Of a stretch of 64,000 nucleotides of DNA, positions 17,507 through 62,482 are shown piece by piece. Origin of the DNA: Selaginella moellendorffii (Eukaryota > Plantae > Lycopodiophyta); the NCBI RefSeq assembly GCF_000143415.4, contig NW_003314291.1, positions 1,716,517 to 1,780,516 on the forward strand. The letters are read 5' to 3'. Made by a program: the position numbers and the translations under genes. The notes below the pieces were generated by a model, which had not been told where the DNA came from, made no database searches, and saw only the letters and a program-made list of their open reading frames with translations. Numbering within the stretch: position 1 is the stretch's first letter; the number at the start of each line of letters is the position of its first letter.

Positions 17507-17548
17507 GTAGGAAGGAACGCGCTTTCCTAGAATTTTCCCTCCTTTTTC

Positions 17549-40121: not shown

Positions 40122-41599
40122 TCAGCAGTCGTATTCCCCAGGCCCCGGCAGTGTCTCGTACACCCTCTTGAATCGCTTGGCGCCGCTGAAGGAGTAGCTC
40201 GGAGGCGACACCTTCTTCGAGTTTGGCTGTTGGCCCTGCATGCAGCCGCGGCAAGTCAGTCAGTGTGGAGTTTGGGTATAGCCCTCACCAAGGATGATAT
40301 GAGCTTGATATTCACAGCCGGTCCTGGTGACTCCAAGCCGACGTTGCCTCTCTCGTGCTCCACAGATATGAAAATCTGACAAAAGCTGTCACCAGGTGAT
40401 TGTTAGTTATCTCCACTTACCTTCTCCCGCTGTTCTCGTCGGGAGTGTGTGAAAGAGATGACAGGTTGATTGAGCCTGCTCGACTGGGGCTGCTTCCCGA
40501 TTGCGGCCACACTTTTATACTCTCCTGCTCCGGGCGTCGCTGTGATTGCCGAGATCTTGCCATGCTGCCACGGTGAATAATTCATGAATAACAACGACAA
40601 CTCTTGTTCTTTACCGACCTTGAAGCGCTTGTCCATGGGGAACTTGATGTGTGGAGCGTTCCTGTTCTCCGAGTGCATCTGGTCACCAATGGATGACCTC
40701 AGGTCACACACCACCGGTCCTGGGGACTCTATTCCGTACAAGCTCTTTGTTGACAAACAAAGCACGCTCTCAGAGTTGTGAGCTTTCAGGGTTGCAGGCT
40801 CGTTTTACCTTGTTGAAGTCTTGACTCAGGTACACTTTCTGCTGCTGCTTCCTTGTCGCGGAACCGATGACTGCCTTCTCCGGCGACTTTTGGTACGAGA
40901 GCACCTGCACGTAACACCAAGTGGCTTCCGTGAGCCAGACCATACTGACCCGCAGCAGCTCACCTGGTCTCCGAAAGACGATGCCTTTTCGTAAGCTCCG
41001 GGCCCGGGTGCGTCTCCTCCTTTGAACTTCTAAAGCATTCAAGAGCGAGGATCCGAAACTCTTTTGTGTTGGTTCAAAGCGAGCATTTACCGTGAAGCGT
41101 CTTGCCAAGGGGAACGCAACTTCTGCGGGGTTCTGGTAGTCCGACTTGACTTGCTTCCCGATGGAGGGAACTAGCTCGTATGCAGGCCCTGTCTCCACAA
41201 ATGCAATCATGAGATGATGAGCTGTCGGCATGCATGATTTCATACCTGGGCTCAGCCCCGGAGTCAGTTTTGAAATCTCGGCATCGATGTAGAGCTGCCA
41301 TGTGACCATGACCATGACAAGGGAAATGTTTGAGAGTGGGTGATGTTGGTTATGGAAGAGTGCGCCCAACCTTCTCCATTCCAATGCGACATCCTCGCCC
41401 AAATCGCACCGATGGCTCTGTGAGCCTGGAGGAAAGAATCTGCAGAGAGAGCACACACGTTAACGCAGGGTGTGTAGCTGTTGGCCACCTGAGGTCCAAA
41501 TGTGGACTTTGTAAATCGACGCCTGGCCACGGGGGGCTTGATGTCAATAACGGGGGGCTGCTCGCCTGCCAAGACGCTGGGTCCCTTGCTGCCCCCCAT
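40122..41599 (-). CDS. SHIPPO-1/ODF3/STPG-type PGP-repeat protein (sperm tail/axonemal), multi-exon
   Basis: Repeats SPG/TGPAY..SIGKQ..S...P...F, ESPGP..SSIGDQ and TPGAGEY..AIGKQ. The last exon reads PSYSFSGAKRF...LPGPGEYDC*. Confidence 0.75.
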
Positions 41600-41723
41600 T
41601 CCATGCTTCACATTCAGCTTCGCATGACTTGCCGACGACCAATCGCCTGCTTCGCCTGGGCGTTAGGGCTAATGTGGATAGTGCCTAGGGAATATCCCGC
41701 CGGCCGAAGCTAGGGTTAGGGCA

Positions 41724-42509
41724 ATGGCGGAGCACGAGGAGGAGGAGGAGGAGGAGGAGCAGCCGCTGGAGGAGGCCCGCAGGGATGCAGTGTACGATGT
41801 GGATGGGCTGCGCGATAAGCTGGAAGACATTGCGTGGGATGGCGAGGTAGGGTGGATCCATTCCTTGTCCGTGTCCGTGCCCATGGACGAGGGCGGCGTC
41901 AGTGTGGAGGACGACCTGGCCCGAGAGATGTGCTTCTATACGCAGGCGCTGGAGGGCGCCCGCGAGGCGTATAGCCAGCTGCAGGAGCTGGGCGCTCCGT
42001 TTCTCCGCCCCAGCGACTACTACGCGGAGATGGTCAAGTCGGACACTCACATGCTCAAGGTCAAGGACCGGCTGCTGAGCGACAAGAAGCAGATCGAGGA
42101 GGAGCAGGAGAGGCGCAAGGCGCGGGAGGCCAAGAAGTATGCCAAGGAGGTGCAGGCCGAGAAGATGAAGGAGCGGGCCAGGCAGAAGAAGCACGACTTT
42201 GAGAGCGTGAAAAAGTGGCGAAAGATGCGCAAGGACAGCGACTTCACGCAAGGGGAGGACGACTTTCCTGTGGATGCTCCAGATGCCAAGCCAAAACGCA
42301 ACGCGGCTGCTCCATGGGACAGGTCCGGAGGGAAGAAGCTCGCTGGTCACAAGAGCAAGAGCAGGCAGCAGAGGGATGCCAAGTTCGGCTATGGTGGTCG
42401 CAAGGGCCTGAGCAAGAAGAACACGGCCGACTCCGCAGCAGGTGGGTTGAAGCGATCTGCTAGGCCAAGCTCAGGTCCGCAGAGCTTCAAGAAGCAGAGG
42501 CGCAAGTAG
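41724..42509 (+). CDS. EBP2: rRNA-processing protein EBP2
   Basis: DDLAREMCFYTQAL, RPSDYYAEMVKSDTHM, RDAKFGYGGRK..KKNT. Confidence 0.95.
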   Translation: MAEHEEEEEEEEQPLEEARRDAVYDVDGLRDKLEDIAWDGEVGWIHSLSVSVPMDEGGVSVEDDLAREMCFYTQALEGAREAYSQLQELGAPFLRPSDYYAEMVKSDTHMLKVKDRLLSDKKQIEEEQERRKAREAKKYAKEVQAEKMKERARQKKHDFESVKKWRKMRKDSDFTQGEDDFPVDAPDAKPKRNAAAPWDRSGGKKLAGHKSKSRQQRDAKFGYGGRKGLSKKNTADSAAGGLKRSARPSSGPQSFKKQRRK

Positions 42510-42574
42510 TAGTAGTAACCAGTGAATGTTTCTTAGCAGGCACAACTTGTTGCTCATGCTCATGCTTTGGTGTG

Positions 42575-44440
42575 GTGGCCATGGGCGGTGACGAGCGCAT
42601 AATAACTTGTCCCTGCCTTGAGCAGCTCCTGGTGTCGGCCGCTCTCCACTATACGCCTGCTGTCCATGCCAAATATACAATCTTGGACGCTCGACAGCCG
42701 GTGCACAGCGCTGAGGGCGTCGCTGCTGGCGATGCCGTCGGACTCGGCATCCTGGCCTCGTCATCATGCCTCGCGCAATGGCAAATCCTCTGCCGCTGCC
42801 CACCGGACATCGGACACCCCCCTACGCCAATCTGAGTGTCGTAGCGCTGATGAAGTCGTGCGCGTTTGCCAGAGTTGCAGCCTCCACCACCTCCCCTCCC
42901 AAACAGAATGTTGTCCCGAATAGACACTCCAAACAGGGGCGCCTCCTGCCGCTCTCCAGCTCCACGGAACCAACCATGACTTGCTCCGGCCGCTCCCCTC
43001 GTGGATGGTCACTCTCAATCTCGGCCGCCGGCAGATAGTGGCAAGCATCCATTCCAGTGCGGCCCCTCCCCTCGTCAACTCGGGGATTATCCGAAGCTGA
43101 TCACCGTGTTAGTGAGAACCGTGATGGCTCTTAACACGGGCTCGAACGTGCCGCGCTTCACCAGCCCGATCCCAAACCACATGACCATGGCCCGTGTGGC
43201 ACTCCCTGCACCACGGACCGCTTGGTGCAGCCGCTGCTTGAGTGCTTTCATGCATGCCCAGCGACGCAACGGTGCGGATGCTGGATGCAGCTTCTGCAGC
43301 AATCTGGTTGGCGCTCTGATGTCTTATGTCTCCAACCAGTCCCTTGCTCCGGAACGCTTGCTGCAAGGGGCTCAGGCTCTGCACAAACAAACTGTAAGTA
43401 TCGCTCAGCATGCCCCTCACCGCTGTTGTATTGGCTGACAGGCGTGCTGTGAGCGCCGGGCCGCTGTTCGCAACCTACCTGCAGGAGCTCATGTCAACAA
43501 GGACATACATGCTGCCTTTCACACACAAACACACACCTCGAAACGCTACTTCCTGGAGCCTGCGGCTGATTATAACGCCTGACCGGTGCCCAAGGAAGTA
43601 CTGCAGCACGGTGCTGGCCAGGCTCCCAAGCCCAAAATCCATTCAGAGCAGGTTGGGGTGCAACTTTCGGGAGGGCAGAAACAAAGGCTGAGGGCCATCC
43701 AGCCATCCTTTTGTTAGACGAGGCCACCAGTGCTCTTGACACAGGGTCGGAGCTCTTGGTACACAAGGCGCTGGACAGTGCTATGCAGGGAGTGAAAACA
43801 AGTGTCATAGTCGCCCATCGTCTCTCCACCACAAGATCTTCGTCCTCCACCAGGCGCGTCTTGTAGAAAGCGGAACACACGATTAGCAGCTCTGACTCAG
43901 CGTACAGCTCTCTTGTGCAAAGCTTGAAACAGTCGCCCGTATCAGAGCTTCTTCTAAGCACTAATGTGAGCATGACGAGGCGTGTCACCAGGGCAAGACG
44001 TGGAGTTGAGCACTCTTGGGAAGCATGGGAGCTTGTGTCTCAGGCCTGGTCACGGCACTCTTTACCCACATCGTCATTCTTTTCGTCGGGCATGAGGAAG
44101 AAGACGCAAACACGCCTGCTGATGCCTGCGCTGACAAGGTGGTATAGACAGCCATGTACACACCTCCAGCGCCCAGCAGCAACGTAAGCCCACCAGTCGC
44201 CAGAGAGATGCTTATCCCCGTCACCAAGCTGCTCACACAAGCAGAGGACAAGAGCAGAACTAGCTCCCCAAGCCGAATACTTTCTCTCCCATGGCGTCGT
44301 GAATGAGGAGGGTGTCAGTGGAGGTGGCTGTGATCACGTCGCCACTCGTCACGCATTGGTCGAAATATCCCACCTCCTGGCTCAGGCAGCTCAGACGTTA
44401 TCTTCTCCCAGCATGTTGTCTCTAGATAAGGATTCAAAGT
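42575..44440 (-). pseudogene. Collapsed ABCB (P-glycoprotein) pseudogene; the NBD1 segment (~43440-43930) lies on the opposite strand
   Basis: Minus strand: QEVGYFD..DTLLIHDAMGEK, AEAASSIRTVAS, SIRDNILFG, MSGGQRQRI, VHRLSS..IVESGRHQELL. Plus strand: [26 protein letters not shown]. Many frameshifts and deletions. Confidence 0.85.
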
Positions 44441-44932
44441 CTCGGCATCGGAATGCTTAGAAATGTTACCGGTAGTCACGACGATCCCACCACACATGTA
44501 GCCGAACCCGAAGAGGCAGCCATTTTATTTTCACAGAAAGTATCCATCTATAAAAGCTAGGTCATATGCTCTTTTTTTTCTGGTCCTTCATTAACACTAT
44601 ATGAATGGATTTTTGTTCATTTTTATAATTTTTAATTTTGTTTAACAGTTATTTACTCCACTTTTTTGAGGAAGCAGCTGCACCCAGCCAATTGACCTTG
44701 CCGTCGCGAGGCCCCTTTCCTGTCTTGGCTGCGCATCTCGTATTTATTACTGTGGCGAGAGCGAGTCGACACACGAATATACTTGTTTCTGTTTGTCATT
44801 TGGCGCCGAAGGGATCGCAGCATAGTCGGAAATAAGACGCCTTACATAAAACAAGTACCAGCGTCCTTATTCACTAAGCGTGCGTACCTTGTACGAGCTT
44901 CTGGTTGTGTACAACCTTATTGCGCTCGGGAG

Positions 44933-46352
44933 CTACACAACTTTGCCTCTGAGAATCGCTTCCGCTTTTCGGACTTCTTTCAGGGGCCCAATCACAAAAA
45001 CCTGCATGCATGGACGTTCCTCTCCATCAATAAAAAAAAAAACCAGCAGACAGCTGAGCTTGCCTTGTCGGGAGGACCTTTGGTGCCACCTATGAAAATA
45101 TTGGCCCTGGATGTACACGAGCGCCTATCATAACTGGCAGCACAAGAAGGCTACGTACCTGCATGATTCCTTGATGGCAACAATGGACGCTCCTTTCCTA
45201 CCGATGATGCGCCCCATTCGACCTTTTGGAACATCTACGACTGCTAGCACCTCCTCCGGATCCTCATGGCGAGCGGCAAGCTCCTCTGACAAGGCAAGCA
45301 ACATGACTGAAAGCTTCGACACTGGTAGCAATCGCACGCACGTACCTGGTATAGCAGGAAGAGCAGGCCAGTTGGCAAACCCGTCATCCTCGCCACAGAA
45401 GCACCGGCAAAAGAGCGAGCTCCTGATGGACAGCTCCCACGCAGAGAAGGCGTCTAGCCTCTGCACCATGTTCCGGTGGATCCGAAGGAGAAAACGAACG
45501 TCATCCGCGGCAGCACGCTTCATCATGTTCGTTAGCGGCCTGTGCGTCCAAAACTCAGGATCCTGGCCAGCACATTTTCATAAGCGCAAGACAAGGTTGC
45601 GGAAGCAGCACGAGGATACCTTTCTCAACAAGCTCCGCACCTCATCTTTCTCGTCATATGCAACACCTACTTCCCAGAGGTTGGCTTCTTTTTCCAAGAC
45701 AGGTTACCTCTTACCGCAATACTTGGCATCTGCCAGCAGGTCCACAAATGAGATGCAGTCGTCTGGGATCCACTGCCTTCCTTGCTGCAGCTCAATCAGC
45801 GAGTGTGCGATCTACAAAGCCATGAGATGCACCAGGCAAGCAACAAGAGCAGCCGCTCACTTGAGTGTCGAAGACGTTGTTGAGCTTGATTCCATGCTGG
45901 AAGTACAATGCCTGTTGTTGTTCAAAGGGTGGTGGTGAGGGAGGCAGATACTCAGTGGACTCAGGGGGGGAGGCACACACTCTACCTCACTGTCGCGCTT
46001 GCAGTCGTGCACGACTTTGGTAACGTGTGGAGATTCGAGAGCAGGCTTGCAGGCTTGCATTAGCGCGTCCCCACCTTGGACTGCATCCACCAGGTAGATC
46101 GCATCCTGGAACGCGAGCTGCGGAGAAGAGCGATTCACAAGACGTAGCGATATCATGTGCGCTTACCTGCATAATGCACAGGCGGCCATGACGGGCGAGG
46201 TCGACGCCCTCGCAGTCGAGGCCAATGGCGAGGGCGTGGGCGGCATTGGGCTCCACAAAGCAGCGGGGCAACTGCAGCGGCAGCGTGACAAGGTGCACGG
46301 GCATCTCCTGCTCGGGGAGGTGCGCCGCGGCGGCCGCGACCCCGTCCCCCAT
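44933..46352 (-). CDS. 3'-5' exonuclease (EXD1/Egalitarian-like) plus KH-domain protein, multi-exon
   Basis: IGLDCEGVDLARHGRLCIMQ, HDCKRDSE, FDTQ, AAADDVRFL, KH motif GRIIGRKG. Confidence 0.9.
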
Positions 46353-46401
46353 TGGAGACAGGACTGTGCCCTAGGCTAGGTAGCTAGGGTTTTGGTTGGG
46401 G

Positions 46402-46803
46402 ATGAGGAGGGCGGTTTGCGCGGCGGCCAGGCTTGGTGCCACTGTGCGCAGCTTTGCCACCGGCAAGGAGGCGTACGCCAGCCGCGAGGAGGTGACCAAT
46501 CGAGTGCTCAACGTGGTGAAGAACTTCCCCAAGGTGAACATCCTCAAGGTGAGTTGTCATGTGTGGGAGGGAAACAAGGGGCTCACTCACGGCTTCTCCT
46601 TGCAGCTCTCGCCAACATCGCACTTCCAAAAGGACCTGGGGCTGGACAGCCTGGATGCTGTCGAAGTGGTGATGGCCCTCGAGGATGAATTCAAGATCGA
46701 GATCCCGGACAGCGACTCGGACAAGATCGTCTCCTGCGCCGATGCCATCGAGTACATCGCAACTCGGCCATCCAAGAAAGAGTCCCTCATCCATCACTTT
46801 TGA
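46402..46803 (+). CDS. Mitochondrial acyl carrier protein (one 57-nt intron, 46549-46605)
   Basis: Arg-rich presequence and [20 protein letters not shown] phosphopantetheine motif. Confidence 0.92.
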
Positions 46804-46904
46804 GATTGTAGCAAATGCAGATTAGGGGTTCGATTCCCCGAGAAGCAACATCATCTTCTGCTTTACTTTCTTGATGCGTCCCTCTACTACGCCCTAGCGT
46901 TGCG

Positions 46905-49900
46905 ATGCGAGTCGTGGTTGCGTGGGCAGATCACGCGGTAAGTCGTCCTCCAGCTGCCCGCCCACCGCTCTCACTTGCAATGCAGCCGGAGCACCTGCAA
47001 GCACCGAAGGCCGTCTGCTACGACTTGGCATTCAGGCCTGGTACCCACATACTAGCTACTATGCATAACTTGCTAACTCATGACCACGCCCCGTAGATGG
47101 AAGCCAGCTTATTGCTGCAGTGGGTAGCCGAGTCCTCATGTATGATGCAGCAACCGGCGACCTTTTGCATTCGCTCAAAGGTGGAAGGATGGACAAATCT
47201 CTCTTTATAATGTATGTTGCCACCCTTGCAGGCCACAAAGGTGCGGTCTACTGCCTTGCCTACTCTCGTGATGGGAAACGCTTTGCTTCGGGGGGTGCTG
47301 ACAAGACCATCATCGTGTGGACCTACAAGGCACGAGGCGCTGCTGCACAGCTCCTCCTCCTCACCTGTGGATGGTGTGTGTGTGTGTGTGTCACAGGCCG
47401 AAGGCATTCTCAAATACAGCCACGCCCACTCCATTCAGTGCCTTGCATATAACCCAGTCACCCAACAGGTGGGACGTCTGGACGCAAAAGCCCTGCCTGC
47501 TTGATTGAATTCCATTTGCGTGAAGCTTGCGAGTGGGACGGCCAGCGATTTCGGGATTTGGTCCCCTGAACAAAAGTCAGTCTTGAAACACACAACCGTG
47601 TCCAAGGTTGGTTTGGGTGGCTGAAAACGCTACTGACATCACATATGAATGTCAGGTGCTTTGTGCGTCCTGGACCAAGGATGGCCAGATCCTGGCTCTT
47701 GGCATGTTCACTGGCCACGTCTACCTCTGTGACAGATTCGGAAACGAACAAGTGAGCGGCTGTGCGGGATTGGATTCATCCATATTCACAAATGTTTGTC
47801 CCACCAGGCCATGATCGAAAAGTCTTCTCCAGTTTGGTCCCTGCAGTGGAACGTCCACAACAGAGCCTCTGATACCCTAGCAGTGGCCTGCTGGGATGGC
47901 ACACTCACATTCTTCAACATATCAGGCAAGCAGGTTTGCTTCGCTGGGTTTTTTGAAAAAGCATGCGTCTACCTGTGGTCTTGCCAGTTTGGGAGATGCA
48001 CAGACTTGGGCTTCGATCCCTGCAGCATCTCGTACACGTGTGATGGCAGGTATCTCTGCGTTGCTGGCTCTGGTCGAAAGGTGATGAGCTCCACTGGCTG
48101 CCCTTTCCGTCGACTACCCTGCCCTCCACTTGCAGGTAGAGCTTCTGTCCAACGAAGGCATCCAACTTACCACGATATGTGAGACGAGCGATTGGGTTTG
48201 GGCCGTTCGCTCTCACCCCAAGGCAGACTACGTTGCGGTGGGATGCAATGATGGGAGCATCTCTATGTTGCAGCTGGTGTTTTCAATGGTAATGCCATGT
48301 CCGAGTAAGGTCTTATATGTCTTGTATGCCTCAGGTTCACAGCTTATACCAAGAAAGGTACGCATACAGAGACGCACTGACCAGTGTCGTTGTCCAGAAC
48401 CTCATCTCCAAAGAAAAGGTTTAGCCTTCATCCCTCAACCCTTTGCTCACAACATTGTGCAATGCCAGGTCCGTATCAAGTGTCACGACTACGTGAAGAG
48501 AATTGCAGTTTATCAAGACAACCTGGCAATACAGATGCCTACCAAAATCATTGTGTATCAATTGCATGGAAGTGGCTTTGCTGCATCTGACTATCAAGTT
48601 CTCGCAAAGCTTAACGGACGGATGGAATGCAACCTACTGGTACTTACGTCACGCCACTTCATTCTGTGCCACGTAAGACTTGTCTCTAACCTTTCCTTCT
48701 CTTGCTGAGATGGCTTCGGATGGCAGGAAACGGAGCTGCAGCTTTATTCCTTGTCTGGGACGAAAGAACGTGAATGGTTTCTTGATTCCTCAATTCGCTA
48801 TATCAAGGTGAGCTCTCTTTTTCTTGTTGTCCCCTTTTATGGTCCGACAAGTACAGGTTTGTGGAGGACCGGTAGGAGGAGAAGGTTTGCTTGTTGGGAC
48901 GAAGGCTGGACAGGTTGTACGGCTGTGGATAAACAATGCCTTTGCAGTGAATTTGTACAGTCACAAAAATCCGGTCCGTTGCCTAGATCTATCTGCCAGC
49001 GGTTCTCGCCTTGCTATTGTTGATGAGATGTCAAACCTGGTCGTCTACGATCTCCAGGTACCGGTCAAAGGTTTACGTTCTGCTGCTTCATGCCTTTTAT
49101 CCCTTCCTCAGAGTAGGACAGTTTGTTACGAGGAAACATCCGCAAGCTCAGTGGCCTGGAACACAAAGCTGGACTCGATGCTTTGCTACTCTGGCAATGG
49201 CATGCTGAGCATCAAAACGGCAGACTTTCCAGTGCATCGGCAGAAGCTGCAGGGCAATGTTGTTGGCTTTCAGGGGTCAAGAATGTTTAGCCTTCAGAAC
49301 TTTACAATGCAGGTAAGGGAAATTCGTTTCTCCTTCAAATCTTCGGCAAATGTTGTTGGGTAGACTGTGGACGTTCCTCAATCAACAAGTATGCGGCAGT
49401 ATTTGCGGACAGGGGACTATCAGAACGCGTACCGTGTGGCTTGTATCGGAGTCACAGAGATGGACTGGCGGGAACTTGCACTTGAAGCTATGAAGGGTCA
49501 GGACTGGAAAGTAGCTCGGGCTGGCTTTATGCGTCTCAGAGACGTTCCTTTTCTCGATCTCCTAAGCCACGCAGCTGACTATCAACCTTGTCATCTTGCA
49601 GCTTGCAGATATGCGTTCCAGGTTTCTTTGCTGTTCTTATCTTCGTGGCTGTGGCTAACCTTGCCTAGCCAGGGAGATTTTGAAGCCGCTGCTCAAGCTT
49701 ACTGTGAATCTGGAGAAGTTGACAAAGCAATGGAAATGTATGCCGATTTACGGATGTTTGAAAAAGCTAAAGCACTAGCCGAATGCATCCAAAACAAGGA
49801 CCAGAACAACAAAGCGAACGTGAGAGACATAATTCAAAGGCAAGCCGAATGGACTGAAGAGACAAACGACCACAACACCGCAGTTGACATGTACATCATT

Positions 49901-51464
49901 GCGGGCCAACCTCAGAAGGCTCTGAGTATTCTTGCTGCTCATGGTCCAGCACTCAAGCTTATTGAGGTAAGTTAATGTGTTCCGCCCGTTCCTTAAAGGA
50001 GGCTGCTGAAAGATGCTCTTGATTTCAGGTTTCACGAAGGCTTAACAAGTCGGATATACAGGAACTTAAACAGTGTGCATCACTAATGCACAAACATGGG
50101 TTGTATACCCATGCTTTGGAGACATATACTAAGCTCTCTGATTTTCGGTGGGTGTTACACATTCTGTCTCTCTTTTAACTTACCTTGCAGGTCAGATCGA
50201 CTTTGCTGCTCCATATAGAGCTTGAGCAATGGGAGGAAGCATTTACAGTGAAGAAACTTCACCCCGAGCTTCAAGAAGATGTGAATCTACCATATGCACA
50301 ATGGCTAATCAGCAGAGACCGATTTGAGGACGCCCATTTGGTCTACAGACAAGCCGGGCGGCCTGATCTGTCAGAACGTCTGTTTGCTCAGCTCATTGAA
50401 AACGCTGTAAGTCCTTTTCTTCCCTCACATGTCACTTGTTGTCGACTGCGTCCAGGTGAAAGAAAAGAGGTTCAAAGATGCTGCACATAGTTCGTGGTTA
50501 CTGGGTATAGAAAAGCTGCAGGTCGATGGAAAATCTGAGGACGAAGACCATAGACGACTGCGGCTGTGTGCAGACATATATTATGCTTACTCCTATATAG
50601 ACCAGTCCATCAGCGAACCATTCAGAACAACCTTACCGGAGACGCTCATTGGCACTGCACGCTTCGTCCTTGCCCGAATTCCAAGGAACTCCATTGCAGG
50701 GGTTTCCGTCGCCAACATTTTGGTTACACTTGCCCGGCATGGGGAACAACTAGGTGGGCAATTCGTTTATTCACGCCCCTCTTATCGGTTGGTCTCGGGC
50801 AGGTGAACACGACGTTGCAAAGGAAGCATACGAGCATTTGCGGCGCTTGAGGGTGCCCTCAAGCTGGGCAGACAAGCTGGAGGCTGCCACTTTAGCTTCC
50901 AGAGCTCGCGCTTTTGTCAGGACCATCGGCCCTTCCGTTTGTTTCTTATGCTCTGGGACATCTCCCTTCGTCTCCTACTTTGAAACCGACTCGTGCGCCA
51001 AATGCCGTCAGCCCAAGTTCTGGTCTTTCTCGACTTTCCGGCAGCTTCCTGTGGTAAGGTTCGGAAAGTATGGAGTTTATTGAGGCGCGCATCGTTTTGT
51101 CACGTGCCAGGTTCAAGTCTTCCTAAAGGATGGCATCACACATCAACGGGCACTGGAACTGTTGCAGCGCTACAACGAGTCTGATGTGCATGGAACAAAC
51201 GTGGAGTACTTGGGCCTGCAGCACAACCTCCATACTGGACGAGTTTATATGGATGACAAAACGCTGTCTAAGCTGCAGGCCTCGCAGTTTTTCGCAGTCG
51301 TGCCAACTGGAGGTGCCACCATTCAAGCTCGCTACTTCATAAGTCTGGAACCTTCACTGTCACTATTTCAGTGCCCATCGTGCGAGCACTTTTTTGAGTT
51401 GGAAGAGTGGGACTTCACCGTCCTCAGGCATGGCTGCTGTGCGTTTTGCCGAAATGCTATGTAA
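46905..51464 (+). CDS. IFT122: Intraflagellar transport protein 122 (IFT-A), multi-exon
   Basis: DLAFRP|[63 protein letters not shown]-terminal CPSC..CAFCR. Confidence 0.95.
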
Positions 51465-51595
51465 AAAGGGAATATTCTAGAACCGCAAGGGCTTTCTTTT
51501 CTTTCCTTGTTCGTGCTTCCCGGGGGCCTCTAATTTCCTTCACTTGCGTAGGCCCTCATGACCGAAAAAAGCTTCTTGTTGTTGTGCGATGCGAC

Positions 51596-54500
51596 ATGGT
51601 CAAGCTTCAAGACATCATTCGGGATCAAGACTATATGATGTACATGGAGCGTGCAAACAGACTAGGTCTCGTTGATGAGGTTGCCAGTTTGGAGGAGGAG
51701 ATGATCTTGAAAAGGTGTCAGGTATCTGAATGGCTAGCTCAGGTAATCCAAACATGGGATGCGGACAGACCGGCACTAGAAAAGCGTATAGAAGATGCGA
51801 GGAAAATTGGATTGGATGAGGTCGCCATGAAAACGGAGGCTGCCATATCAGCAAGGGAGAATGTAGTCGCACGGAGCATAGAGGTAGCCATTGACAAAGA
51901 GTTACACAGCGCGTTTGAGCAGTGGCTACAAAATGCACAAAGAATGGGTATGGACGATCTTGTCAGGAAGTCTAGCGTTGCTTTCAAAGCGAGAATGAAA
52001 AGTATTGAGCTGCAACTTCTGCAAAAGGCAACATCTGGCACAAAAGAAGAGTTTATTGCTATGTCTGAAAGAGCTCATTCCCTAGGCTTAACTGCAGCAG
52101 TGAACCGTTCCAGAAGAATAGTATATAAAAGGGTTTCTGGGCTCTTCAGTGTTGCTGGACATGCTCAGCAAACAAATGCTGAACAGTGGAATTCGCTACA
52201 AGAACGAGCAGACGCCCTGGGCATCAGTCGCGAAGTATTGGATCATATAGCAGGACACTGCGATAAACGAAGTTTGGAGACGATAGATCATGATAGACCA
52301 GCTACAGTGACGCATGAGCCGGCTGTGGTTGAAGCTAATGTACCATTGTGGTCAATGATGCAGAATTGGACAGAAATAAATCAAGTAAGGAAGAGGTGGC
52401 AGAGAAGCATGGAAATTTCTGAACAGGCGCAAGTAGCCATAAATGCGTCTCCCATCAAAATGAGGGCCATGGATACACGGATTATTTCTGCAAGTCCAAG
52501 GCAGCAAGGCGTCGATTACGAGAGTGAGTGTGATGAAAAGCATGATTCTGAACCATTACGATCTGAGAGCAGCAAAGAAATGGACATGGACGCAATTTTG
52601 TGCATGCCTTTGATTCTTACCCGACACACCATCGAGCAAAAGCTGGGCTGTTCTCCAAATAACCTACAGTGGGTGACAAAACTGGACTTGAGCCATGAAG
52701 GTCTTACTTCCCTCGGAGATGGGGTGATATCTGAATGGTGTCCCAGGATAATAGCTCTTACTTGTGATATGAATCGTCTAACCACACTGAAGGATGCTTT
52801 TCTTGGGTGTGAGCAGCAGGTAGAGCATGTTTCGGCACGAAACAACTTCATATCGGATCTTTCGGGCTTGCAGAGCTTATGTAGTTTAGAAAGTCTTCAC
52901 CTCGATGGGAATAATCTTATTAGTCTTGGTCCTTGGTGCCAGAAGACTCAAGAGGTGACGGTTAATTATAATTACTGTGTGAAGCTCAAAGAGCTCACCC
53001 TGAGCTGCAACAGAATAGCCAAAATATCAAAGATGGGAGTCTTTTGTCCGTGTCTTCAAGTTTTAGACCTTGCATCAAACCACCTCGTCACCATGGGTAC
53101 AGCATTGACTGGGCTAAACCAGCTACGAGTACTAGATGTTGGACAGAACAGGCTCAAAGGCCCGAGTCTGTGGGACGCATTGAGAAACTGTCCTCTCCTT
53201 ATTTCGCTTGTAGCCTCAAGAAATCGGCTTACAGATCTCCCATCTTTTGCGGGAAGTGTCCTCTTGCGTGAACTGTGGCTTAACGGTAACGCTATTCGAA
53301 AGTTGTCTTCTGTGGCTTGGATGCCAAACTTACAAAGGTTATACCTTCAAGATAATTCGATTGACACGGTTGAGCCTCTATGGGGCTGCCCAGCACTGGA
53401 GGTACCTCTAATTCCTAGTGAACATAGACACCTTTGACCTCCAACTGTCTTGGCTGCAGGTGCTTGACTTGTCGTTCAATTCAATATCTGATTTGACTCA
53501 GTTGCGTCAACTTGCGTGCTTTATACATTTGCGGTCTTTGCAGCTGAATGACAATCCTGTTTCTGAGCACGTGGAGTATGTGGATACTGTTCTAAACGCT
53601 GTGCCTTGGTTGATCGAGCTTGACAATGAGGCAGTAGGAGAAAGCACTAAAAGCGAGGTCGTCAAAACGATTTTTCTAAACGTAATGCGTGTTATTGGGA
53701 TGCAATATCTTCATGAAAAAGCTGCACGAAATGAAATAATTTCCTCAGTATGCGAAAAGCCGGATGAGATTCAAATGGTGGTGATCAAGTGCACAACTCA
53801 GAATCAATCCTATCAGTGGTTCCAGCATCCGACTGCGATTTCTGGGCACAACCAGGATTTGGAGCATCATACTCTTCCCTTAGATACGTTCCGAAACGGC
53901 TCAGCTTGTTGGATTATCCTGCGGGCAGCAGTGCTCGAAGCTCTTCAGTACGACAGTATAAGATCTACCCTGGCAGCTTCGGGATTGGAACATGTTAATG
54001 AGAAAGGCCTCTGCTTATCCACCGACATGCGAGCAAAGCTGGACGTGCTATGTAGCTTACAGATGTGTTCGAAGCAGAGGGAAAAGCTTTTACTTGCAAG
54101 CAAGGATTTTTCAGCTGAAAGAGATGACTATGTCAATACAAGAAAAAATGACTTGGAAATTTGCTTGGAGGAACACGTCAGCTTTCAAAACACCTCGTGG
54201 GCAGCTTTGACAAGAAAGAATGAGGCTACTAATGCCATACAAGCTCTATGGAAAGGAAGGACAATGCAAAAAAAAATTGCGTTATTGAATCGCCATAAAA
54301 CAAAAGAATCCTTTATTAAGCTGCAGGCTCTTTGGAGAGGGTATTCATTTCGCAAAAAATTAAAAGGAGCAATTGCAAGCTCCAAGTACATCGACAACGA
54401 CACTTTTGACTACGGCCTTGTTGACGAAGAGCATTTCTTTGTTGATGATAACCAATTCGGGTGTTCAAAAGTAAGTCCATTCAATTTGTGCTGTCACTTT

Positions 54501-55151
54501 ACAAGGACATTTCCGATTGGTCAGGATATAATCGTTGGCTCAGCATCTTCTGGTCAATTGCAGGACGTAGATTGCTTACTCCGGTGTCTCCTTAATAGGA
54601 GCAATCGAACTGAATCTAAGGTAAGAATGCCATTGATTCTGTAGCATGACTTGCATGGTATCAGCTTGGCGACGAACCGGAGATAAAGAACGAACTGGCA
54701 CAGATAGCTGATGAATGGTGCGTAACTCTCCCGGTTGATACTTGTTTTCAACTTGTACAATGCACAGGGGATTTAAAAGCGCAACAACTATCAAACAGTT
54801 CATGAAAGCTTGTAGAAAGGTGAAAAGACCAGCTAAAATATTAAAATCATTCATACACGGTATGGCATTATTTTTCATCCTTTGGAAGATTACGTTTGCA
54901 ATGGTACAGATCCACAAAAACGATTACTGTTATCTAAAATCAATGCAGGAGTTTCAAGTGAAAGAAAAAGATTGCCAAGTAAGTGTTGGAGCTGCCATGA
55001 CTAAGTTTATGGTGTGTTTTTGGTAGATATAAAGAAAAAACTTCGCAAGTCTTCCCATGACAATGAGGATGTAATAAGTCGCTCACATCTCACGCGGCCG
55101 AAAGATGTTTTAAAGCCCAGTGTGTATTGCTTTGTCGACAAAATGGTTTGA
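51596..55151 (+). CDS. Leucine-rich-repeat and IQ-motif protein (LRRIQ1-like), multi-exon; 3' end uncertain
   Basis: About 12 SDS22-type LRRs with an LRR cap (LNDNPV..Y), two IQ motifs (IQALWKG, LQALWRGY), acidic DTFDYGLVD and an EW|GFK motif. Confidence 0.75.
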
Positions 55152-55284
55152 TGCGAATATTCTTCCGAAGTGCATATGGGGTTTTGAATCTCCCGCCATA
55201 TGACATGCCCTAATCCGGAGTCAGGGGTTTTGGAAAGGTAGCTTCATTTTGGCGGCGGTCTGACCTTGTTAGAGTTCATTCAAG

Positions 55285-56347
55285 ATGAATAACAATCTTT
55301 TGACGGAAAGGGCGATTAGAGATGTTTTTGAGGTGACGAGCTACATTACTTTTGGTAGCGAAGATGCACCACTGCAATATGGACTTAAGGCTCGTAAGTG
55401 TCATCACTATGTTTGAACGATCAACTTGTTGTCTATGATGCAGCACTCCGGTCTGCAATCACGGGCAAACATATGGTTACAAATCCGGCAAAGAAGGGAA
55501 AAACAGTAGATGTCTACTTTCAAAAAGAGCATCCGTGGGTGTCTGATGTAAGTCTGGAAGACGAACCGCATAAACACTATAATTATTTGTAACAGTTACC
55601 TGGAAATCTCAGGGAGACCCCTACAAAGACCGCATGGGATACCGAGAGCTTCAACCTGAGAAATATAAAGGCTTCTTATCTTCAGACTTTACAAAGAGGG
55701 ATGAGTTTAGCAATACAATGCGCACCAATCAATATCGGGAAATGCTTGAGGTGAACTGGACTTTTCTATTTCAATACAGCATATAATGACTCGCTTGATA
55801 ACAGGTTGATAATAAACACAGCAAAAAGACCTTGGCTGCAATGACAGAGCAGATTGCTGAACTGGCTGATGGAAAAGAAGAGAAGCGAGTTCCAACGCGG
55901 GTATAGAGTTTTTTTTTTTTTTTTTTTTGTTTTGTTTCTCCTTTCTATACTTTTGGTTGTGAAACAGTTTGAAGGGCCAAAGTATTTGTATGATATTGGA
56001 AACCCAGGCCTGGCAGTNNNNNNNNNNNNNNNNNNNNNNNNNNNNNNNNNNNNNNNNNNNNNNNNNNNNNNNNNNNNNNNNNNNNNNNNNNNNNNNNNNN
56101 NNNNNNNNNNNNNNNNNNNNNNNNNNNNNNNNNNNNNNNNNNNNNNNNNNNNNNNNNNNNNNNNNNNNNNNNNNNNCAGACAGCGTCTGATGAAATAGGC
56201 AGGCATGCTAACTCGTTTGGATATACAAAGCCACACTTTGCACACAAGCCAATTATAGAAGACACTTTTTATCGTCAGAAAAACATTTTTTTTCCTGCTA
56301 AGACTAGAACGAACTTTGTTCAACAAGCGAATCCTGTTGAAGACTAA
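55285..56347 (+). CDS. Putative flagellar-associated protein (CFAP96/UPF0602-like N-terminus) spanning the assembly gap
   Basis: Hand-spliced in-frame exons 55285-55393, 55444-55547, 55613-55750, 55805-55900, 55968-gap and gap-56347, all GT-AG and stop-free. Confidence 0.7.
56018..56176. other. Assembly gap (159 N)
   Basis: Run of N. Confidence 1.
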
Positions 56348-57399: not shown

Positions 57400-60300
57400 T
57401 CATGGCGAAACTGGCTGTCTTTTGACCTTTTCTATGTCATTCTCTATTTCTCTAAGACTGCACAATAATCGAAGTTAGAATAGAAATAGAAAGACATCTC
57501 GAACACACCGTAACCGGAGCTCTAGTTGACGTTGCTTCACAATCAGGGGATTTGGTGCAGAACGTACTTCTTGGTCTGATCCTGCCCCTGGGGGTGGAAT
57601 CCAAAGAGGATTGTACACCTGTACTAAGCTACCAAAATCAGAATCTTATAATTATATGTTTGGAATCAGACCCTTGTTTCATCACAGGCCGTGTCATCTT
57701 CTGTTTCCTTCACATCTTTAAATTTTGCTCTGTTACGATTTCTTGATACTCTCCGTCCAAGGGCAAAGATTATACACAAGAAACTTAAGGACGCCAATCC
57801 AATCGAACCAACTGTAGCGCCGTATATCCGGGCCTCCTTCACTGAAAACGACAAAAACGTTTAATAAAAGATATATTTTAAATTTTGCTTACTGTAAGCC
57901 CACCAAGCACTTCTGGGAACCGCTATGAATATAATAATTAGTTTTTGCGCTATAAGTGGATGTAAGAAATCCGAAGGACAGGTTTCAGAGCAACCAAAGT
58001 TTCCCATGTCATTGACAATCAAAGTAAGCACTTCGCCATCCACAGTTCCCTGTGTAAGAGTACCAATTAACCTTAACATAAATAAGAGCATGATTAACTT
58101 ACATTGTAGGTTATGGTGGACAACGCGATGTTACATTCTGCCACTGTACCACGAAATCTCACTGCCTGGGCCTGGACACTAAAGAAGCCGTTTGAAATTA
58201 TAGCTGAAAGACAGGGCTCCCACATGTAGCTGTTCTCCAGTCTGTATTCCGCACTAGTTACAGAACTTTGGGGTAGCAAAATTGTAAGGGAACCAGAACT
58301 TGTCTCGAGCGTGATCTCCAAATTGTGTATTCTCCCATCCTCTGGCCAAAAAGTGCTGTTACAACTAACTGACGTCCAATGAGATATACCTCTAATATCA
58401 GAAGCATCGGGATCTCCCACAGAAATGCCTGCGATAGGATTTTTCACTTTGAATGCCACCGTATTGCCTGATAAGGGCTTCAGGCTACCATCATATTGTT
58501 TCAAAACATAGTCCGGTGCACTTATAAACGGCGGGTCATTGAAGGGAAGAACCTGAACTGGAATGCTGACAGTATCTCCAGTGTTGTTGCTATTCCTTAT
58601 TGACAACATCAGCGTATCGTTACCATTGTAATGACTATCACTGTATTAACGAAGGTTAGCTTTTGCAAATTAAGAAGGGATATGAACTAACCCAATATAA
58701 AGGAAGTTTTGAATTGCCTTGTTGATAGCGTCCGAATTGCCTAATAAAGTTATATTATAACCAAATGTTGTTTTATTTCCCATGTCATGCCACAACTGGG
58801 GCGCGTCCCCAGGAAGATACAAGTGTCCATGCTCGGCAAACACGTCCAATGTAAGAAGTTCTGTATTATTCGTGTAACTCAAATATAGTTCATTAAAATC
58901 GCTGTTAGCGAAATGCAATGAATATATGAACTAGAAATTTGTGACAGCGTACTCTGAAGTCGAAATGGACTGGCCTTCAATGCCTATCAATGCTTTGGGC
59001 CAAAATGTGAATTCTGGCGGCTCCGTACGAACAGAAACGAAAACAAGTCCATTTGCTGATTGGTTCGGGGAAGAAGGGCTTGTAACCGTTAAGACATATA
59101 TGAACATATCGTTCCCCTTGTATCCCTTTCTTGGAGTGTATCTGACTTTCCCGTTTTCAGCAACTACTGACCCAAATGATGGAGCCTACAAATTAAAAGC
59201 AGATTATTGATTGCTCTTCTAATTGTTACCTTGTAGAAGCCGGTCAACACCTTCTTCCCGCCATCAACAATGTCATTTGCCAATACATCAATTACTATGG
59301 ACACCTCATCCCATGTCCATATGGTGTCGTCTACAGCTTTTGGAAATGACGCCTCTGCAAGTCATTACTTTAAAAAATATTCAAAGGACATTCTAATGAT
59401 TTTACCTGAGATTACGTTCACCTTTACAGGGCTTCCTGGCAATGGAATGTTGTCATAAGTGACGGTGATTGTGTATTGACCAATATCAAATATTGTATAG
59501 GCAGTTGAGTATCCCTTCCCACTATCTGAAATACTTTGGGTCAAAGATCCACCACTACCATCGATCTTCCAGCGGATTTTATCTCGCTGTCCCTGAACAA
59601 AGTTTCCGAGGGAATCTAGTAAGTAGACAGAGACCTGTTGCATAGAATTTCTTGCAATTTTTGATTGTAAACCTTCTCCAGAAATTCTTGACTGGTTGAT
59701 CATTACTGGCCCTGCATTAGGGTATTAAAACGTGATGGATCCTGTGCGAATCACTTACCAGCTGCTATTGTCAGTTGTCGCTGACAGAGGACATAGTACA
59801 TCCAGGTAACGGTGATGTTATAAACGCCCGCTTTTGTAGTTGTGTAGCTGATGTGATAAAGGCCGTCCAAAGTGACGTCTGGAGTCGGATTTCCTAACAC
59901 GTAATAATCTCCAAGGCTCAAAGACGTTTTGACAGTCTTGCGGGATGAAATGTTTGCTTCAAATTCATATGCTGTGTCATCTGTGGAATCCAGCAACTGC
60001 AAATCAAATGATGCGGAACCACCGACACTGGCCCCTGTGTATCCGTCACCATAACAATTACCCTTGGCTGGATCCACAATACCTGTATAAAAGGACGACA
60101 ATGTTCATGATCACACGCCATTCATCTTACCGACAAAAGTTGTAAATTTAGCGGGAGATCCTTTCACACTAATGTTTCCAGCAAGTACTTGGAGTTGAAA
60201 GTTTCCTTCATGTGATGTAAATGAAACCAACACCTTTCCAAGTGTAGATGGATCCATAGCAGTCATATTCAGGTCGTCAAGAGGATAGGTGCTCGTATCT

Positions 60301-62482
60301 TCAAGTAATTGGAATCCAGCAGTTTGCTGAACTCTATAAAGTGTCACATCAAATAAGTATTCATCTGCAACTGGGTTGTTGTATAAATCACGTTTGTTAA
60401 TGATAAATTGGACAAGGCTGTCAATCTGAAAATCATTGACGCCATATTGCCATTCAAGAAAGCAGTTAGCCATTGAAATTGGACCTGCATAAGACTAATG
60501 AACAAAGGAAACTGATCAAAGGAAAAGTCTTGCCTGGTAAAACCGTAAATGCCAGCGGAGAGTTAAAAATGGACATCGTGCCACCGCCAACTTGTACTTG
60601 ATTGACTCCAGATTCAAAAACGTTAAATGTAATAAGAACATATCCAGATTCATAAACATCTTGTTTTACCAAAACATTTGTAATGGAACTAGCACCGCCT
60701 GACGAGTTTGTGACGTTTACAGAAAAGGGATAGAAGGCCCCGAGATTGCCTGTGGCTTCACTCACATTATTGTTGAACGCATCCATCAGAAGAATCCGCA
60801 GGGCAACTTGTTCTCCGGCAACAAAGCTGTCAACATCATGGAGCCACTCAGCTGTACAAAAGGGCACGTATACAGGACCTATACCATTCAAGGGCTCGCT
60901 TATTCTCTTGAATGATGGGCAAGGTGACTACCTGCTACGACTCCAAATGTCAATGGTGAATTTTGGATGGATTTAAAGCCGTCGCCAATTTCTAAAAGGT
61001 GATGCCCTGCTGCAATTGGGGTAAAGCTCATAACCATGTAGCCGGCTTGTAGTTGCGTTGAGTTGACGTCTGATATATACCTGCTAGCTCCAAGTTTTCC
61101 TTCCACACTTACAGTGAAATCATAACTTCCTATCCACACTGTGGAGCCAAATTCGTCGGCCAGTTTTACCATGACGTTTGCTTTCGTACCAGCCTGAAAA
61201 GTTGGTTCCGAAGTGAATTGGCCCACACATGCAGGAATATAAATCCTCCCTAAAAGGATGTGTAAGCCTCATGCTCCAGGATCGTACACATATACCTGGT
61301 GTCACATCATACTGCAATGGTGAGTTTACAACTTCGCCGGAGACAGTCCCAATTGAAAGAGTGAAATATCCTGATAGTTTGGCCACAAAATAAATAAATT
61401 CATACCCAGTTTGAAAGTCAGGTACTATGTTAAACTCTGGATCGGGAATAGCTCTAGTATCAGACTTGGTACCAATTATACGTAGATCAAATTTTACCAT
61501 TGAAGTTTTTCCATTTGCAAAATTCAAAGTATTGTTACGCACATCTTTCAGTAACACCCTTGCTGCAGCTAAAGAACCAGCCTTAAAGGAGTGACTGTCG
61601 TTCACCCATGAAGCAATGCAATTTTTAACAGAAGCATTCCCTACATTTGTTTTTCTTTCTTAGCATTTGGACAAGGTTAAAGGATTCTACCAACCTGCAA
61701 CGATTCCAAACTGAAATGGAGAGCCCACAATAATGTCACTTCCGACCCCAATGGTCATCGAGTATTGTCCGATAATTTGAGGAATAAAGGATATAACCTC
61801 CACCGTCCCGTCAAGTTTCATACCAATATCACTTATTGCGCTGGGTTGATTGACTGTCACGACAAAGTTCACCAGTCCATAAGCTGGCATGTTATCGGCA
61901 TCATAAAGCTTAACATTTAAGTAGGAAGTTTCCCCAACATCAAATATACTGCCATAGGGCCAATTCCCAACACAAGAACTTACGGCAGCATTTGCTTTAA
62001 GACGAAAAGATCCTTTGGTTAAGTAAGAAAGAGGCAGCACAAAACAAAACCAAATATATATATACCTGAGAGAACTGAAAATTCAAATGGCGAGCCTTTT
62101 ACGTGTGTGTTCTGGTGTTTACGAACATTTAAATAGTATGTGCCCGAAATCGTTGGAACGTTGAATGCAACAAATTGGTAATTTTCTTGAGATGTAATGT
62201 TTGAGTGAACCAGAGATGTACCATTTTTGCTAGTGACGCTTAGTTCCAAATCATATTTTTCATATATTTGCAGCATTGCTTTATCGTTCGGATTAAAAAC
62301 ATTTCTGTCTTTCTCCCAGCCAGAGGAGGCTATAATTTCCAAAAACGGGTGCTTTATTAGTAGTTTTCTTAGAGAGAGCATGCGACAAAACCTTTTTTAC
62401 AGTCGTCAAACAAACAGCTTGTGAGCTCAGGAGAGCTAAAAAGTTCAAAAAATACCAGAGTCAGCGCCAGAATGCATGCCAT
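57400..62482 (-). CDS. GEX2: GAMETE EXPRESSED 2-like sperm surface protein (signal peptide, filamin/Ig-like repeats, one TM helix), multi-exon
   Basis: Signal peptide MACILALTLVFF, repeats ending GSP(F/L)xFxVxxG, FNDPPFISAP, ISVGDPD, FRGTVAECN, LTLIVNDMGNFGC, then a TM helix and short tail. Confidence 0.88.

What the first reader, a model, noticed from the sequence alone, without database searches (positions are those of the whole stretch)
40122..62482. Cluster of motile-sperm/gamete genes: IFT122, LRRIQ1-like, CFAP96-like and GEX2 contiguous, with a SHIPPO-repeat gene 5 kb upstream
Seen: four adjacent genes fill 46.9-62.5 kb with nothing else between them. The first three are co-oriented and about 130 bp apart (the LRRIQ1-like end is approximate). 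Known: IFT122 and SHIPPO/ODF3 proteins are ciliary, GEX2 mediates sperm attachment, and land-plant flagella occur only on sperm. Inference: this may be a co-regulated spermatogenesis locus joining axoneme assembly and gamete adhesion; I do not recall such a locus being described. The LRRIQ1 and CFAP96 assignments come from motif recall.
Basis: partly seen in the sequence, partly recalled or inferred. Interest (0 to 1): 0.75.

Follow-up and report, generated by a model that had tools for sequence, protein, structure and literature searches.

The report
Spikemoss sperm-gene neighbourhood: IFT122, LRR-IQ, FAP90, GEX2
In the spikemoss Selaginella moellendorffii, three genes tied to the sperm flagellum and one gamete-adhesion gene lie side by side in 15.6 kb, which is unlikely by chance, but nothing I could test shows that they are switched on together or kept together in other plants.

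Summary
The adjacency is real. Four consecutive genes fill 46.9-62.5 kb:
- IFT122 (46905-51464, +)
- an LRR + IQ protein (51593-54644, +)
- a microtubule-inner-protein gene (55285-56347, +)
- GEX2 (57666-62482, -)

No other gene or RNA was detected between them.

- The "CFAP96-like" gene is a FAP90/CFAP90 homologue. It is still ciliary.
- "LRRIQ1-like" holds only as domain architecture. The gene belongs to an unnamed family. All its named members come from land plants with swimming sperm.
- Only IFT122→LRR-IQ is about 130 bp apart (128 bp). LRR-IQ→FAP90 is up to 640 bp. Spacing of about 100 bp is normal in this window.
- Three housekeeping genes separate the SHIPPO-like gene from IFT122.

The assembly gap lies inside the FAP90 coding region. 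Both sides match FAP90 in order, so they belong to one gene. About 23 codons are hidden.

Co-regulation is unproven. I found no shared promoter words and no DUO1 sites. The one relative locus I could fetch does not conserve the linkage. Expression could not be tested.

A run of four such genes is expected 0.0001-0.09 times per genome for plausible class sizes. The scan has already noted two similar sperm-gene neighbourhoods on other DNA of this genome. I did not check them.

The parts
40125..41599 (-). SHIPPO (PG-rich repeat) protein gene, probable; outlier of the neighbourhood
   Evidence: Two PGPGxY motifs and about four degenerate copies. Pfam SHIPPO-rpt gives E = 0.0073 and 17.8 bits on one exon, below the cut-off of 20. 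In the atlas, 28 of 30 look-alikes are SHIPPO-rpt clusters at 0.95. Exon model not resolved.
41724..46803 (.). Three intervening housekeeping genes: EBP2 (41724-42509, +), 3'-5' exonuclease/KH gene (about 43-45.6 kb, -), acyl carrier protein (about 46.1-46.8 kb, +)
   Evidence: Pfam Ebp2 E = 7e-66. KH_1, DNA_pol_A_exo1 and PP-binding hits. EBP2 is an exact match to a Selaginella moellendorffii protein cluster.
46905..51464 (+). IFT122 (IFT-A subunit), multi-exon
   Evidence: Pfam Beta-prop_IFT122_1st, Beta-prop_IFT122_2nd (1.7e-48), TPR_IFT122 (1.5e-35), Zn_ribbon_IFT122 and Zn_ribbon_IFT122_C occur in order. Start MRVVVAW and the stop follow the C-terminal zinc ribbon. Not every exon was mapped.
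51593..54644 (+). LRR + IQ protein, about 997 aa, two exons (51593-53401, 53460-54644; intron 58 nt)
   Evidence: Pfam LRR_4, LRR_8 and IQ. Twelve strong HMMER hits, then a break to generic LRR proteins. All named hits are from Ginkgo, Diphasiastrum, Calypogeia, Riccia, Physcomitrium and Adiantum. Collinear tblastn over the N-terminal, LRR and IQ parts. Splice sites. The tail after about 54510 is not conserved, and a further exon is not excluded.
55285..56347 (+). FAP90/CFAP90-family microtubule inner protein gene. Exons 55285-55393, 55444-55547, 55613-55750, 55805-55900, 55968-56017, then the gap, then 56177-56347
   Evidence: phmmer against PDB 6u42_7Z (FAP90, 242 aa): residues 43-77 (3.6e-9), 72-122 (1.1e-13), 209-234 (8e-4). 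All four mapped introns are GT..AG and 50-67 nt long. A weak SPMIP1 hit on the last exon fits the shared SNYG module described in PMC10973386.
56018..56176 (.). Assembly gap inside the FAP90 coding region
   Evidence: It hides about FAP90 residues 171-193. The frame offset is 2 at the nominal length.
57666..62482 (-). GEX2 (FUS1/GEX2 family gamete adhesion protein), multi-exon, convergent with the FAP90 gene
   Evidence: Ig_GEX2_N six times (best 1.1e-23) and Filamin twice. Signal-peptide exon 62482-62392 with a GT..AG intron. Hydrophobic span plus a basic tail before the stop at 57666-57668.

Best explanation
This is a genuine stretch of the Selaginella moellendorffii nuclear genome. Four consecutive genes, each separately transcribed, serve the swimming sperm:
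- IFT122 belongs to the IFT-A train that builds and recycles the flagellum.
- The LRR-IQ protein probably binds calmodulin. All named members of its family are from plants with flagellate sperm.
- The FAP90/CFAP90 protein lines the inside of axonemal doublet microtubules.
- GEX2 attaches sperm to egg.

I read it as a lineage-specific co-expression neighbourhood. In that reading, genes that are silent almost everywhere and active only in sperm-forming cells have come to sit together and probably share a chromatin state. It is not an operon, a fusion or a conserved syntenic block.

Shown: gene identities, order, spacing, and a low-GC3 signature common to the four. Inferred: sperm-specific expression and any shared regulation.
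For: - Gene identities: Pfam; FAP90 in the PDB; LRR-IQ family and its taxa.
- Organism: six window proteins were looked up and five have exact matches in the collection. Four of these sit in clusters with named S. moellendorffii proteins.
- Nothing else between the genes.
- Chance estimate: the expected number of four-gene runs per genome is 1.4e-4 to 0.09 for 200-1000 sperm or cilium genes among about 22,285. The gene count and class sizes are my assumptions.
- Composition: the four genes have GC3 of 0.39-0.49, against 0.65-0.88 for the five single-exon housekeeping genes and the ACP exon measured. The change falls within the 101 bp between the ACP gene and IFT122.
- Earlier scan notes, not checked by me, describe two more sperm-flagellum neighbourhoods in this genome. 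One holds a GEX2-like gene beside IFT52.
Against: - No 7- or 8-mer is shared by at least 4 of the 5 upstream regions.
- The DUO1 motif RRCSGTT is absent from all five upstream regions and scarce in the window, 17 found against 45.6 expected.
- Spacing of 100-130 bp is general here. ACP→IFT122 is 101 bp, and the SHIPPO and EBP2 start codons are 124 bp apart.
- In Marchantia, flagellar genes depend on MpDUO1 but MpGEX2 does not (PMC6290024).
- Metagenome contigs L003 and L004 carry an LRR-IQ orthologue without IFT122, FAP90, GEX2 or SHIPPO in the held flanks.
- The low GC continues to the window end, so it may be regional rather than linked to expression.
- The probability is post hoc. It rises to about 1 if the class holds 2000 genes.
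Confidence: 0.5

Rival explanations
1. Chance adjacency. The four genes are what they seem, but they lie together by accident in a very compact, gene-dense region. They have independent promoters and no shared control.
For: - No shared promoter words or DUO1 sites.
- No linkage in L003 or L004.
- Tight spacing also occurs between unrelated housekeeping genes.
- If male-specific genes number about 2000, about 1.4 such runs are expected per genome.
- GEX2 and flagellar genes have different regulators in Marchantia.
Against: - For the stricter classes (200-500 cilium genes) a run of four is expected 1e-4 to 6e-3 times.
- Two other neighbourhoods of the same kind were noted in the same genome (unchecked).
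- The four genes share a low GC3.
Confidence: 0.4
2. Read-through or bicistronic expression. IFT122 and the LRR-IQ gene, 128 bp apart and co-oriented, are made from one primary transcript, as reported for some green algae.
For: - Only 128 bp separate the IFT122 stop from the LRR-IQ ATG.
- The 10-mer TGCGATGCGA occurs exactly twice in the window, at both start codons.
Against: - The same spacing (101 bp) separates the unrelated ACP gene from IFT122.
- No transcript data are available.
- That polycistrons are not established in land plants is my own knowledge.
Confidence: 0.05
3. Assembly artefact. The gap at 56018-56176 joins two pieces that are not neighbours in the real chromosome, so GEX2 is not truly next to the flagellar genes.
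For: A gap of estimated length lies between the FAP90 exons. The frames do not match at the nominal length.
Against: - Both sides of the gap carry collinear parts of one 242-residue FAP90 homologue, residues 43-122 before and 209-234 after.
- The missing 23 codons plus a short intron fit the 159-nt estimate.
Confidence: 0.03

Closest known systems
Co-expressed gene neighbourhoods of eukaryotes, e.g. the Chlamydomonas uni linkage group rich in basal-body and flagellar genes (PMC2120091); testis-specific clusters in Drosophila (my own knowledge)
   Same: Unrelated genes serving one cell type or organelle lie together more often than chance would suggest. Each has its own transcript.
   Different: This one is much smaller and tighter, four genes in 15.6 kb. 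It mixes axoneme assembly with gamete adhesion. Neither co-expression nor genome-wide enrichment has been demonstrated.
Chlamydomonas FAP90 / human CFAP90 (C5orf49), A-tubule microtubule inner protein with an SNYG module (PDB 6U42; PMC10973386)
   Same: The window gene matches FAP90 in order in three exons and has about the same length, roughly 245 aa with the gap filled.
   Different: The middle third is poorly conserved and partly hidden by the assembly gap. Its location in Selaginella sperm is untested.
Metazoan LRRIQ1 / CEP97 (LRR + IQ proteins)
   Same: A leucine-rich repeat block is followed by IQ calmodulin-binding motifs.
   Different: No metazoan protein appears among the strong hits. 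The family has its own N-terminal part of about 400 residues, with five helical repeats of about 45 residues. Orthology to LRRIQ1 is not shown.
Arabidopsis GEX2 / Chlamydomonas FUS1 gamete adhesion proteins (PMC12069490)
   Same: Signal peptide, a series of Ig-like and filamin domains, a single C-terminal membrane span.
   Different: Eight Ig-like hits here, against seven described for the family. The function in a flagellate sperm is untested. In Marchantia, GEX2 is not controlled by DUO1.

Membership tests
IFT122 (IFT-A) | Two N-terminal beta-propellers, TPR domain, two C-terminal zinc ribbons, in this order | tested here: met
   All five IFT122-specific Pfam models hit successive exons between 47.1 and 51.46 kb.
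FUS1/GEX2 | Ectodomain made of GEX2-type Ig-like and filamin domains | tested here: met
   Ig_GEX2_N six times (best E = 1.1e-23) and Filamin twice.
FUS1/GEX2 | Type I membrane protein: signal peptide and a single C-terminal membrane span | tested here: inconclusive
   Read from the sequence only. The N-terminal exon is hydrophobic, and a 20-residue hydrophobic span plus a basic tail lies before the stop. No predictor was run.
FAP90/CFAP90 | Collinear sequence similarity to the FAP90 chain of the Chlamydomonas doublet structure | tested here: met
   Residues 43-77, 72-122 and 209-234 of 242 match, with E = 3.6e-9, 1.1e-13 and 8e-4.
CFAP96 (C4orf47, DUF4586) | Match to the family profile | tested here: not met
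   No such Pfam hit at E up to 1 on any exon. The best solved-structure relative is FAP90 instead.
LRRIQ1 | LRR block followed by IQ motifs | tested here: met
   LRR_4 2.5e-28, LRR_8 1.2e-21, IQ 1.4e-5. The same architecture is seen in the orthologues.
LRRIQ1 | Orthology to the metazoan protein | tested here: inconclusive
   The top 12 of 1.84 billion representatives are plants or unnamed environmental sequences. The next hits looked up are unnamed or bacterial-type LRR proteins from metagenomes. No LRRIQ1 sequence was at hand for a reciprocal test.
SHIPPO / ODF3 (PG-rich repeat) | Repeated PGPGxY-type units matching Pfam PF07004 | tested here: inconclusive
   One exon scores 17.8 bits, below the cut-off of 20. 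Other exons give no hit. The atlas look-alikes are nearly all SHIPPO-rpt clusters.
Co-regulated gene cluster | Shared cis-element in the promoters | tested here: not met
   No shared 7- or 8-mers. No DUO1 motif in any of the five upstream regions.
Co-regulated gene cluster | Conserved linkage in other species | tested here: inconclusive
Co-regulated gene cluster | Co-expression | not testable with these tools
   No expression data were reachable.

The most novel reading that the evidence does not exclude
Selaginella arranges its sperm programme in several small co-regulated chromatin neighbourhoods. GEX2-family adhesion genes sit repeatedly next to intraflagellar-transport genes: here beside IFT122, LRR-IQ and FAP90, and elsewhere beside IFT52 according to earlier scan notes. 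This would be the first described set of spermatogenesis gene clusters in a plant. The LRR-IQ gene would mark a new sperm-flagellum protein family specific to land plants with swimming sperm.
Probability: 0.2. Interest if true: 0.65.

Novelty: new member of a known kind. Interest (0 to 1): 0.4.

Why it matters
If the neighbourhood is functional, it gives a compact, testable handle on how a land plant switches on its sperm-only genes. Regulation of the flagellar programme outside bryophytes is almost unknown.

Two results stand whatever the answer on clustering:
- The gene called CFAP96-like is a FAP90/CFAP90 axonemal inner protein.
- The LRR-IQ gene belongs to an uncharacterised family found, among named sequences, only in Ginkgo, ferns, lycophytes, mosses and liverworts. 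That makes it a good candidate for knock-out in Marchantia or Physcomitrium.

If the adjacency is chance, the locus is ordinary.

Tried and rejected
- Word-index protein searches with LRR-IQ exon 1, whole and restricted to the N-terminal 400 residues, gave only generic LRR hits or nothing. LRR words swamp the index, and the length limits exclude longer orthologues.
- The atlas and PDB searches of the LRR-IQ exon or family profile gave only generic LRR proteins. FAP246 appears among them, at the generic LRR level.
- CFAP96 assignment: rejected.
- DUO1-site and shared k-mer tests of the promoters: negative.
Synteny in Diphasiastrum, Riccia, Physcomitrium, Adiantum and Ginkgo could therefore not be read, and no annotated gene models were obtained.
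- The metagenome scan gave two usable contigs of an unidentified organism, with no linkage.
- Literature: no paper holds both GEX2 and IFT122, and none links antheridia, IFT and GEX2.
- A sequence look-up of a GEX2 exon in the scan's own notes was blank, which means nothing.
- Joined spliced protein models were not sent to any search. All searches were exon by exon, by reference.
Full report
ORGANISM AND SETTING

Six predicted proteins of the left half of the window were looked up by exact sequence. Five are in the public collection (EBP2, a PPR protein, GPI2/PIG-C, gemin-2, a GeBP-like protein). Four of them sit in clusters with named Selaginella moellendorffii proteins. They lie on a 1.9-Mb scaffold, and near-identical copies lie on a 135-kb scaffold, the second haplotype.

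The window is gene-dense. From left to right I recognised:
- a PPR gene (13.2-16.2 kb)
- a GeBP-like gene
- gemin-2/SIP1
- a VQ-motif gene
- a neutral invertase
- GPI2
- a kinase-like ORF
- the SHIPPO-like gene
- EBP2
- an exonuclease/KH gene
- an acyl carrier protein (ACP) gene
- the four genes of the finding

THE GAP, TESTED FIRST

The run of N at 56018-56176 lies inside the third gene. I mapped its exons from the sequence:

| Exon | Coordinates |
|---|---|
| 1 | 55285-55393 |
| 2 | 55444-55547 |
| 3 | 55613-55750 |
| 4 | 55805-55900 |
| 5 | 55968-56017, runs into the gap |
| last | 56177 to the stop at 56345-56347 |

All four introns before the gap are GT..AG and 50-67 nt long.

Exons 2 and 3 and the post-gap piece match Chlamydomonas FAP90 (PDB 6u42 chain 7Z, 242 aa). 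The matched residues are 43-77 (E = 3.6e-9), 72-122 (1.1e-13) and 209-234 (8e-4), in order. So the two sides of the gap belong to one gene, and the join is very probably correct.

At the nominal 159 nt the frames differ by 2. There are 497 coding bases before the gap. About 23 residues, FAP90 171-193, are hidden. Sixty-nine bases plus one short intron fit the estimated length. The gap does not affect the adjacency claim.

THE FOUR GENES

1. IFT122, 46905-51464 (+). Successive exons hit Beta-prop_IFT122_1st, Beta-prop_IFT122_2nd (1.7e-48), TPR_IFT122 (1.5e-35), Zn_ribbon_IFT122 and Zn_ribbon_IFT122_C. The protein starts MRVVVAW and ends just after the last zinc ribbon. I did not map every exon.

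2. LRR-IQ protein, 51593-53401 and 53460-54644 (+), about 997 aa.
- Pfam sees only LRR and IQ.
- A full HMMER search of 1.84 billion representatives gave 12 strong hits (228-379 bits). There is then a sharp break to generic LRR proteins below 190 bits.
- Every named strong hit comes from a land plant with swimming sperm: Ginkgo, Diphasiastrum, Calypogeia, Riccia, Physcomitrium and Adiantum. The rest are unnamed environmental sequences.
- Of the next hits looked up, only two carry names (an RHS repeat-associated protein and an LRR protein). All come from metagenome collections.
- The orthologues align with the window gene over the N-terminal 400 residues, the LRR block and the IQ region, and they share the architecture.
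- No metazoan LRRIQ1 appears, so "LRRIQ1-like" describes architecture only.
- The phyletic pattern is that of a sperm-flagellum or basal-body gene. This is an inference.

3. FAP90/CFAP90 homologue, 55285-56347 (+). It is not CFAP96, since no DUF4586-type hit was found. FAP90 is a doublet-microtubule inner protein. It shares an SNYG module with CFAP90, SPMIP1 and others (PMC10973386). That explains the weak SPMIP1 Pfam hit on the last exon.

4. GEX2, 57666-62482 (-).
- There are six Ig_GEX2_N hits and two filamin hits.
- A signal-peptide-like first exon (62482-62392) is spliced with GT..AG to the next exon.
- A hydrophobic span and a basic tail precede the stop.
- This fits the FUS1/GEX2 family as described in PMC12069490.

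SPACING AND WHAT LIES BETWEEN

| Interval | Distance |
|---|---|
| ACP stop → IFT122 ATG | 101 bp |
| IFT122 stop → LRR-IQ ATG | 128 bp |
| LRR-IQ stop → FAP90 ATG | 640 bp (a further LRR-IQ exon after a possible donor at 54621 is not excluded) |
| FAP90 stop to GEX2 stop (convergent) | 1.3 kb |

No tRNA, Rfam family, notable repeat or Pfam-positive ORF lies between the genes.

The spacing of about 130 bp is not special to sperm genes:
- The housekeeping ACP gene sits 101 bp from IFT122.
- The SHIPPO and EBP2 start codons are 124 bp apart.
- The GeBP-like and gemin-2 genes end within about 45 bp of each other.

THE SHIPPO-LIKE GENE (40125-41599, -)

- It has two PGPGxY motifs and several degenerate copies.
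- One Pfam hit falls below threshold, and other exons give none.
- In the atlas, 28 of 30 look-alikes are SHIPPO-repeat clusters.
- I take it as a probable SHIPPO protein.
- Three housekeeping genes separate it from IFT122.

IS THE CLUSTERING MORE THAN CHANCE?

I assumed about 22,285 genes (my knowledge of the published annotation). For a sperm or cilium class of 200, 300, 500, 1000 or 2000 genes, the expected number of four-gene runs per genome is 1.4e-4, 7e-4, 6e-3, 0.09 or 1.4. The run is therefore unlikely unless the class is very broad. The estimate is post hoc.

The scan's earlier notes describe two more neighbourhoods in this genome. I did not check them. They are:
- ARL3-LRRCC1-IFT52-GEX2-like
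- HYDIN-SPEF1-SPATA4

If they are right, both GEX2-family genes have ciliary neighbours. That has a probability of 3e-4 to 2e-3 by chance, assuming two GEX2-family copies.

TESTS OF SHARED REGULATION

- The DUO1 consensus RRCSGTT (PMC6290024) occurs 17 times in the window against 45.6 expected. It occurs in none of the five upstream regions.
- No 7- or 8-mer is shared by four of the five upstream regions.
- In Marchantia, flagellar genes depend on MpDUO1 while MpGEX2 does not.
- One sequence-level feature is shared by the four genes. Their GC3 is 0.39-0.49, against 0.65-0.88 for the neighbours measured (SHIPPO 0.65). The switch falls between the ACP gene (0.81) and IFT122 (0.49).
- This could mark narrow expression. 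However, overall GC also stays low to the window end, so a regional effect is possible.

CONSERVED LINKAGE

A metagenome scan with an alignment of the LRR-IQ family found two long contigs of an unidentified eukaryote (L003, L004). Their orthologue is 48% identical in the best segment. None of IFT122, FAP90, GEX2 or SHIPPO lies in the held flanks. The upstream neighbour looks like a complex I 30-kDa subunit. This is weak evidence against conservation.

VERDICT

The interpretation as a co-regulated spermatogenesis locus is plausible but unproven. I give about even odds between a non-random co-expression neighbourhood and mere chance adjacency.

It is a further member of a known kind of arrangement, the functional gene neighbourhood (compare the Chlamydomonas uni linkage group, PMC2120091). 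The scan has met the same kind of thing twice before on other DNA of this genome.

Joined spliced models were not searched. Every search was made exon by exon, by reference.

Noticed in passing
window 51593-52780: The N-terminal 400 residues of the LRR-IQ protein hold about five repeats of about 45 residues, each with a core like A-x-x-L-G-[LIM]. This part is conserved at 23-33% identity in the orthologues from Ginkgo, lycophyte, fern, moss and liverworts and matches no Pfam family.
   Followed up: partly
window 46901-46910 and 51585-51594: The 10-mer TGCGATGCGA occurs exactly twice in the 64 kb. One copy overlaps the IFT122 start codon and the other abuts the LRR-IQ start codon. About 0.1 exact copies are expected by chance. 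The meaning is unknown. In the second copy its ATG is out of frame, so it may be a small upstream ORF.
   Followed up: partly
window 46100-51464: There is a sharp codon-composition step between neighbours 101 bp apart. The acyl carrier protein gene has GC3 of 0.81 and IFT122 has 0.49. All four neighbourhood genes are at 0.39-0.49, and the housekeeping genes measured are at 0.65-0.88.
   Followed up: partly
window 16349-18610 and 41599-41724: The compaction is extreme. The GeBP-like and gemin-2 genes converge with stop codons about 45 bp apart. The SHIPPO-like and EBP2 start codons diverge from a 124-bp spacer.
   Followed up: no
whole window: The DUO1 binding consensus RRCSGTT is under-represented, 17 found against 45.6 expected from shuffles. 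This probably reflects CpG depletion.
   Followed up: no
window 13246-42506: Proteins of this window have exact copies on a 1.9-Mb scaffold and near-identical copies (SELMODRAFT_138112, _138108, _236892, _47256) on a 135-kb scaffold. These are the two haplotypes of the assembly. Whether the second haplotype also holds the four-gene run could not be read.
   Followed up: no
L003 and L004 (metagenome contigs Ga0209208_10000282, Ga0116227_10000144): Two environmental contigs of 62 and 118 kb carry an LRR-IQ family gene at most 49% identical to any named plant orthologue. They come from an unidentified eukaryote, presumably one with flagellate cells.
   Followed up: partly
window 55902-55933: A long poly-T tract lies in the intron just before the assembly gap. 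It is a likely cause of the sequencing gap.
   Followed up: no
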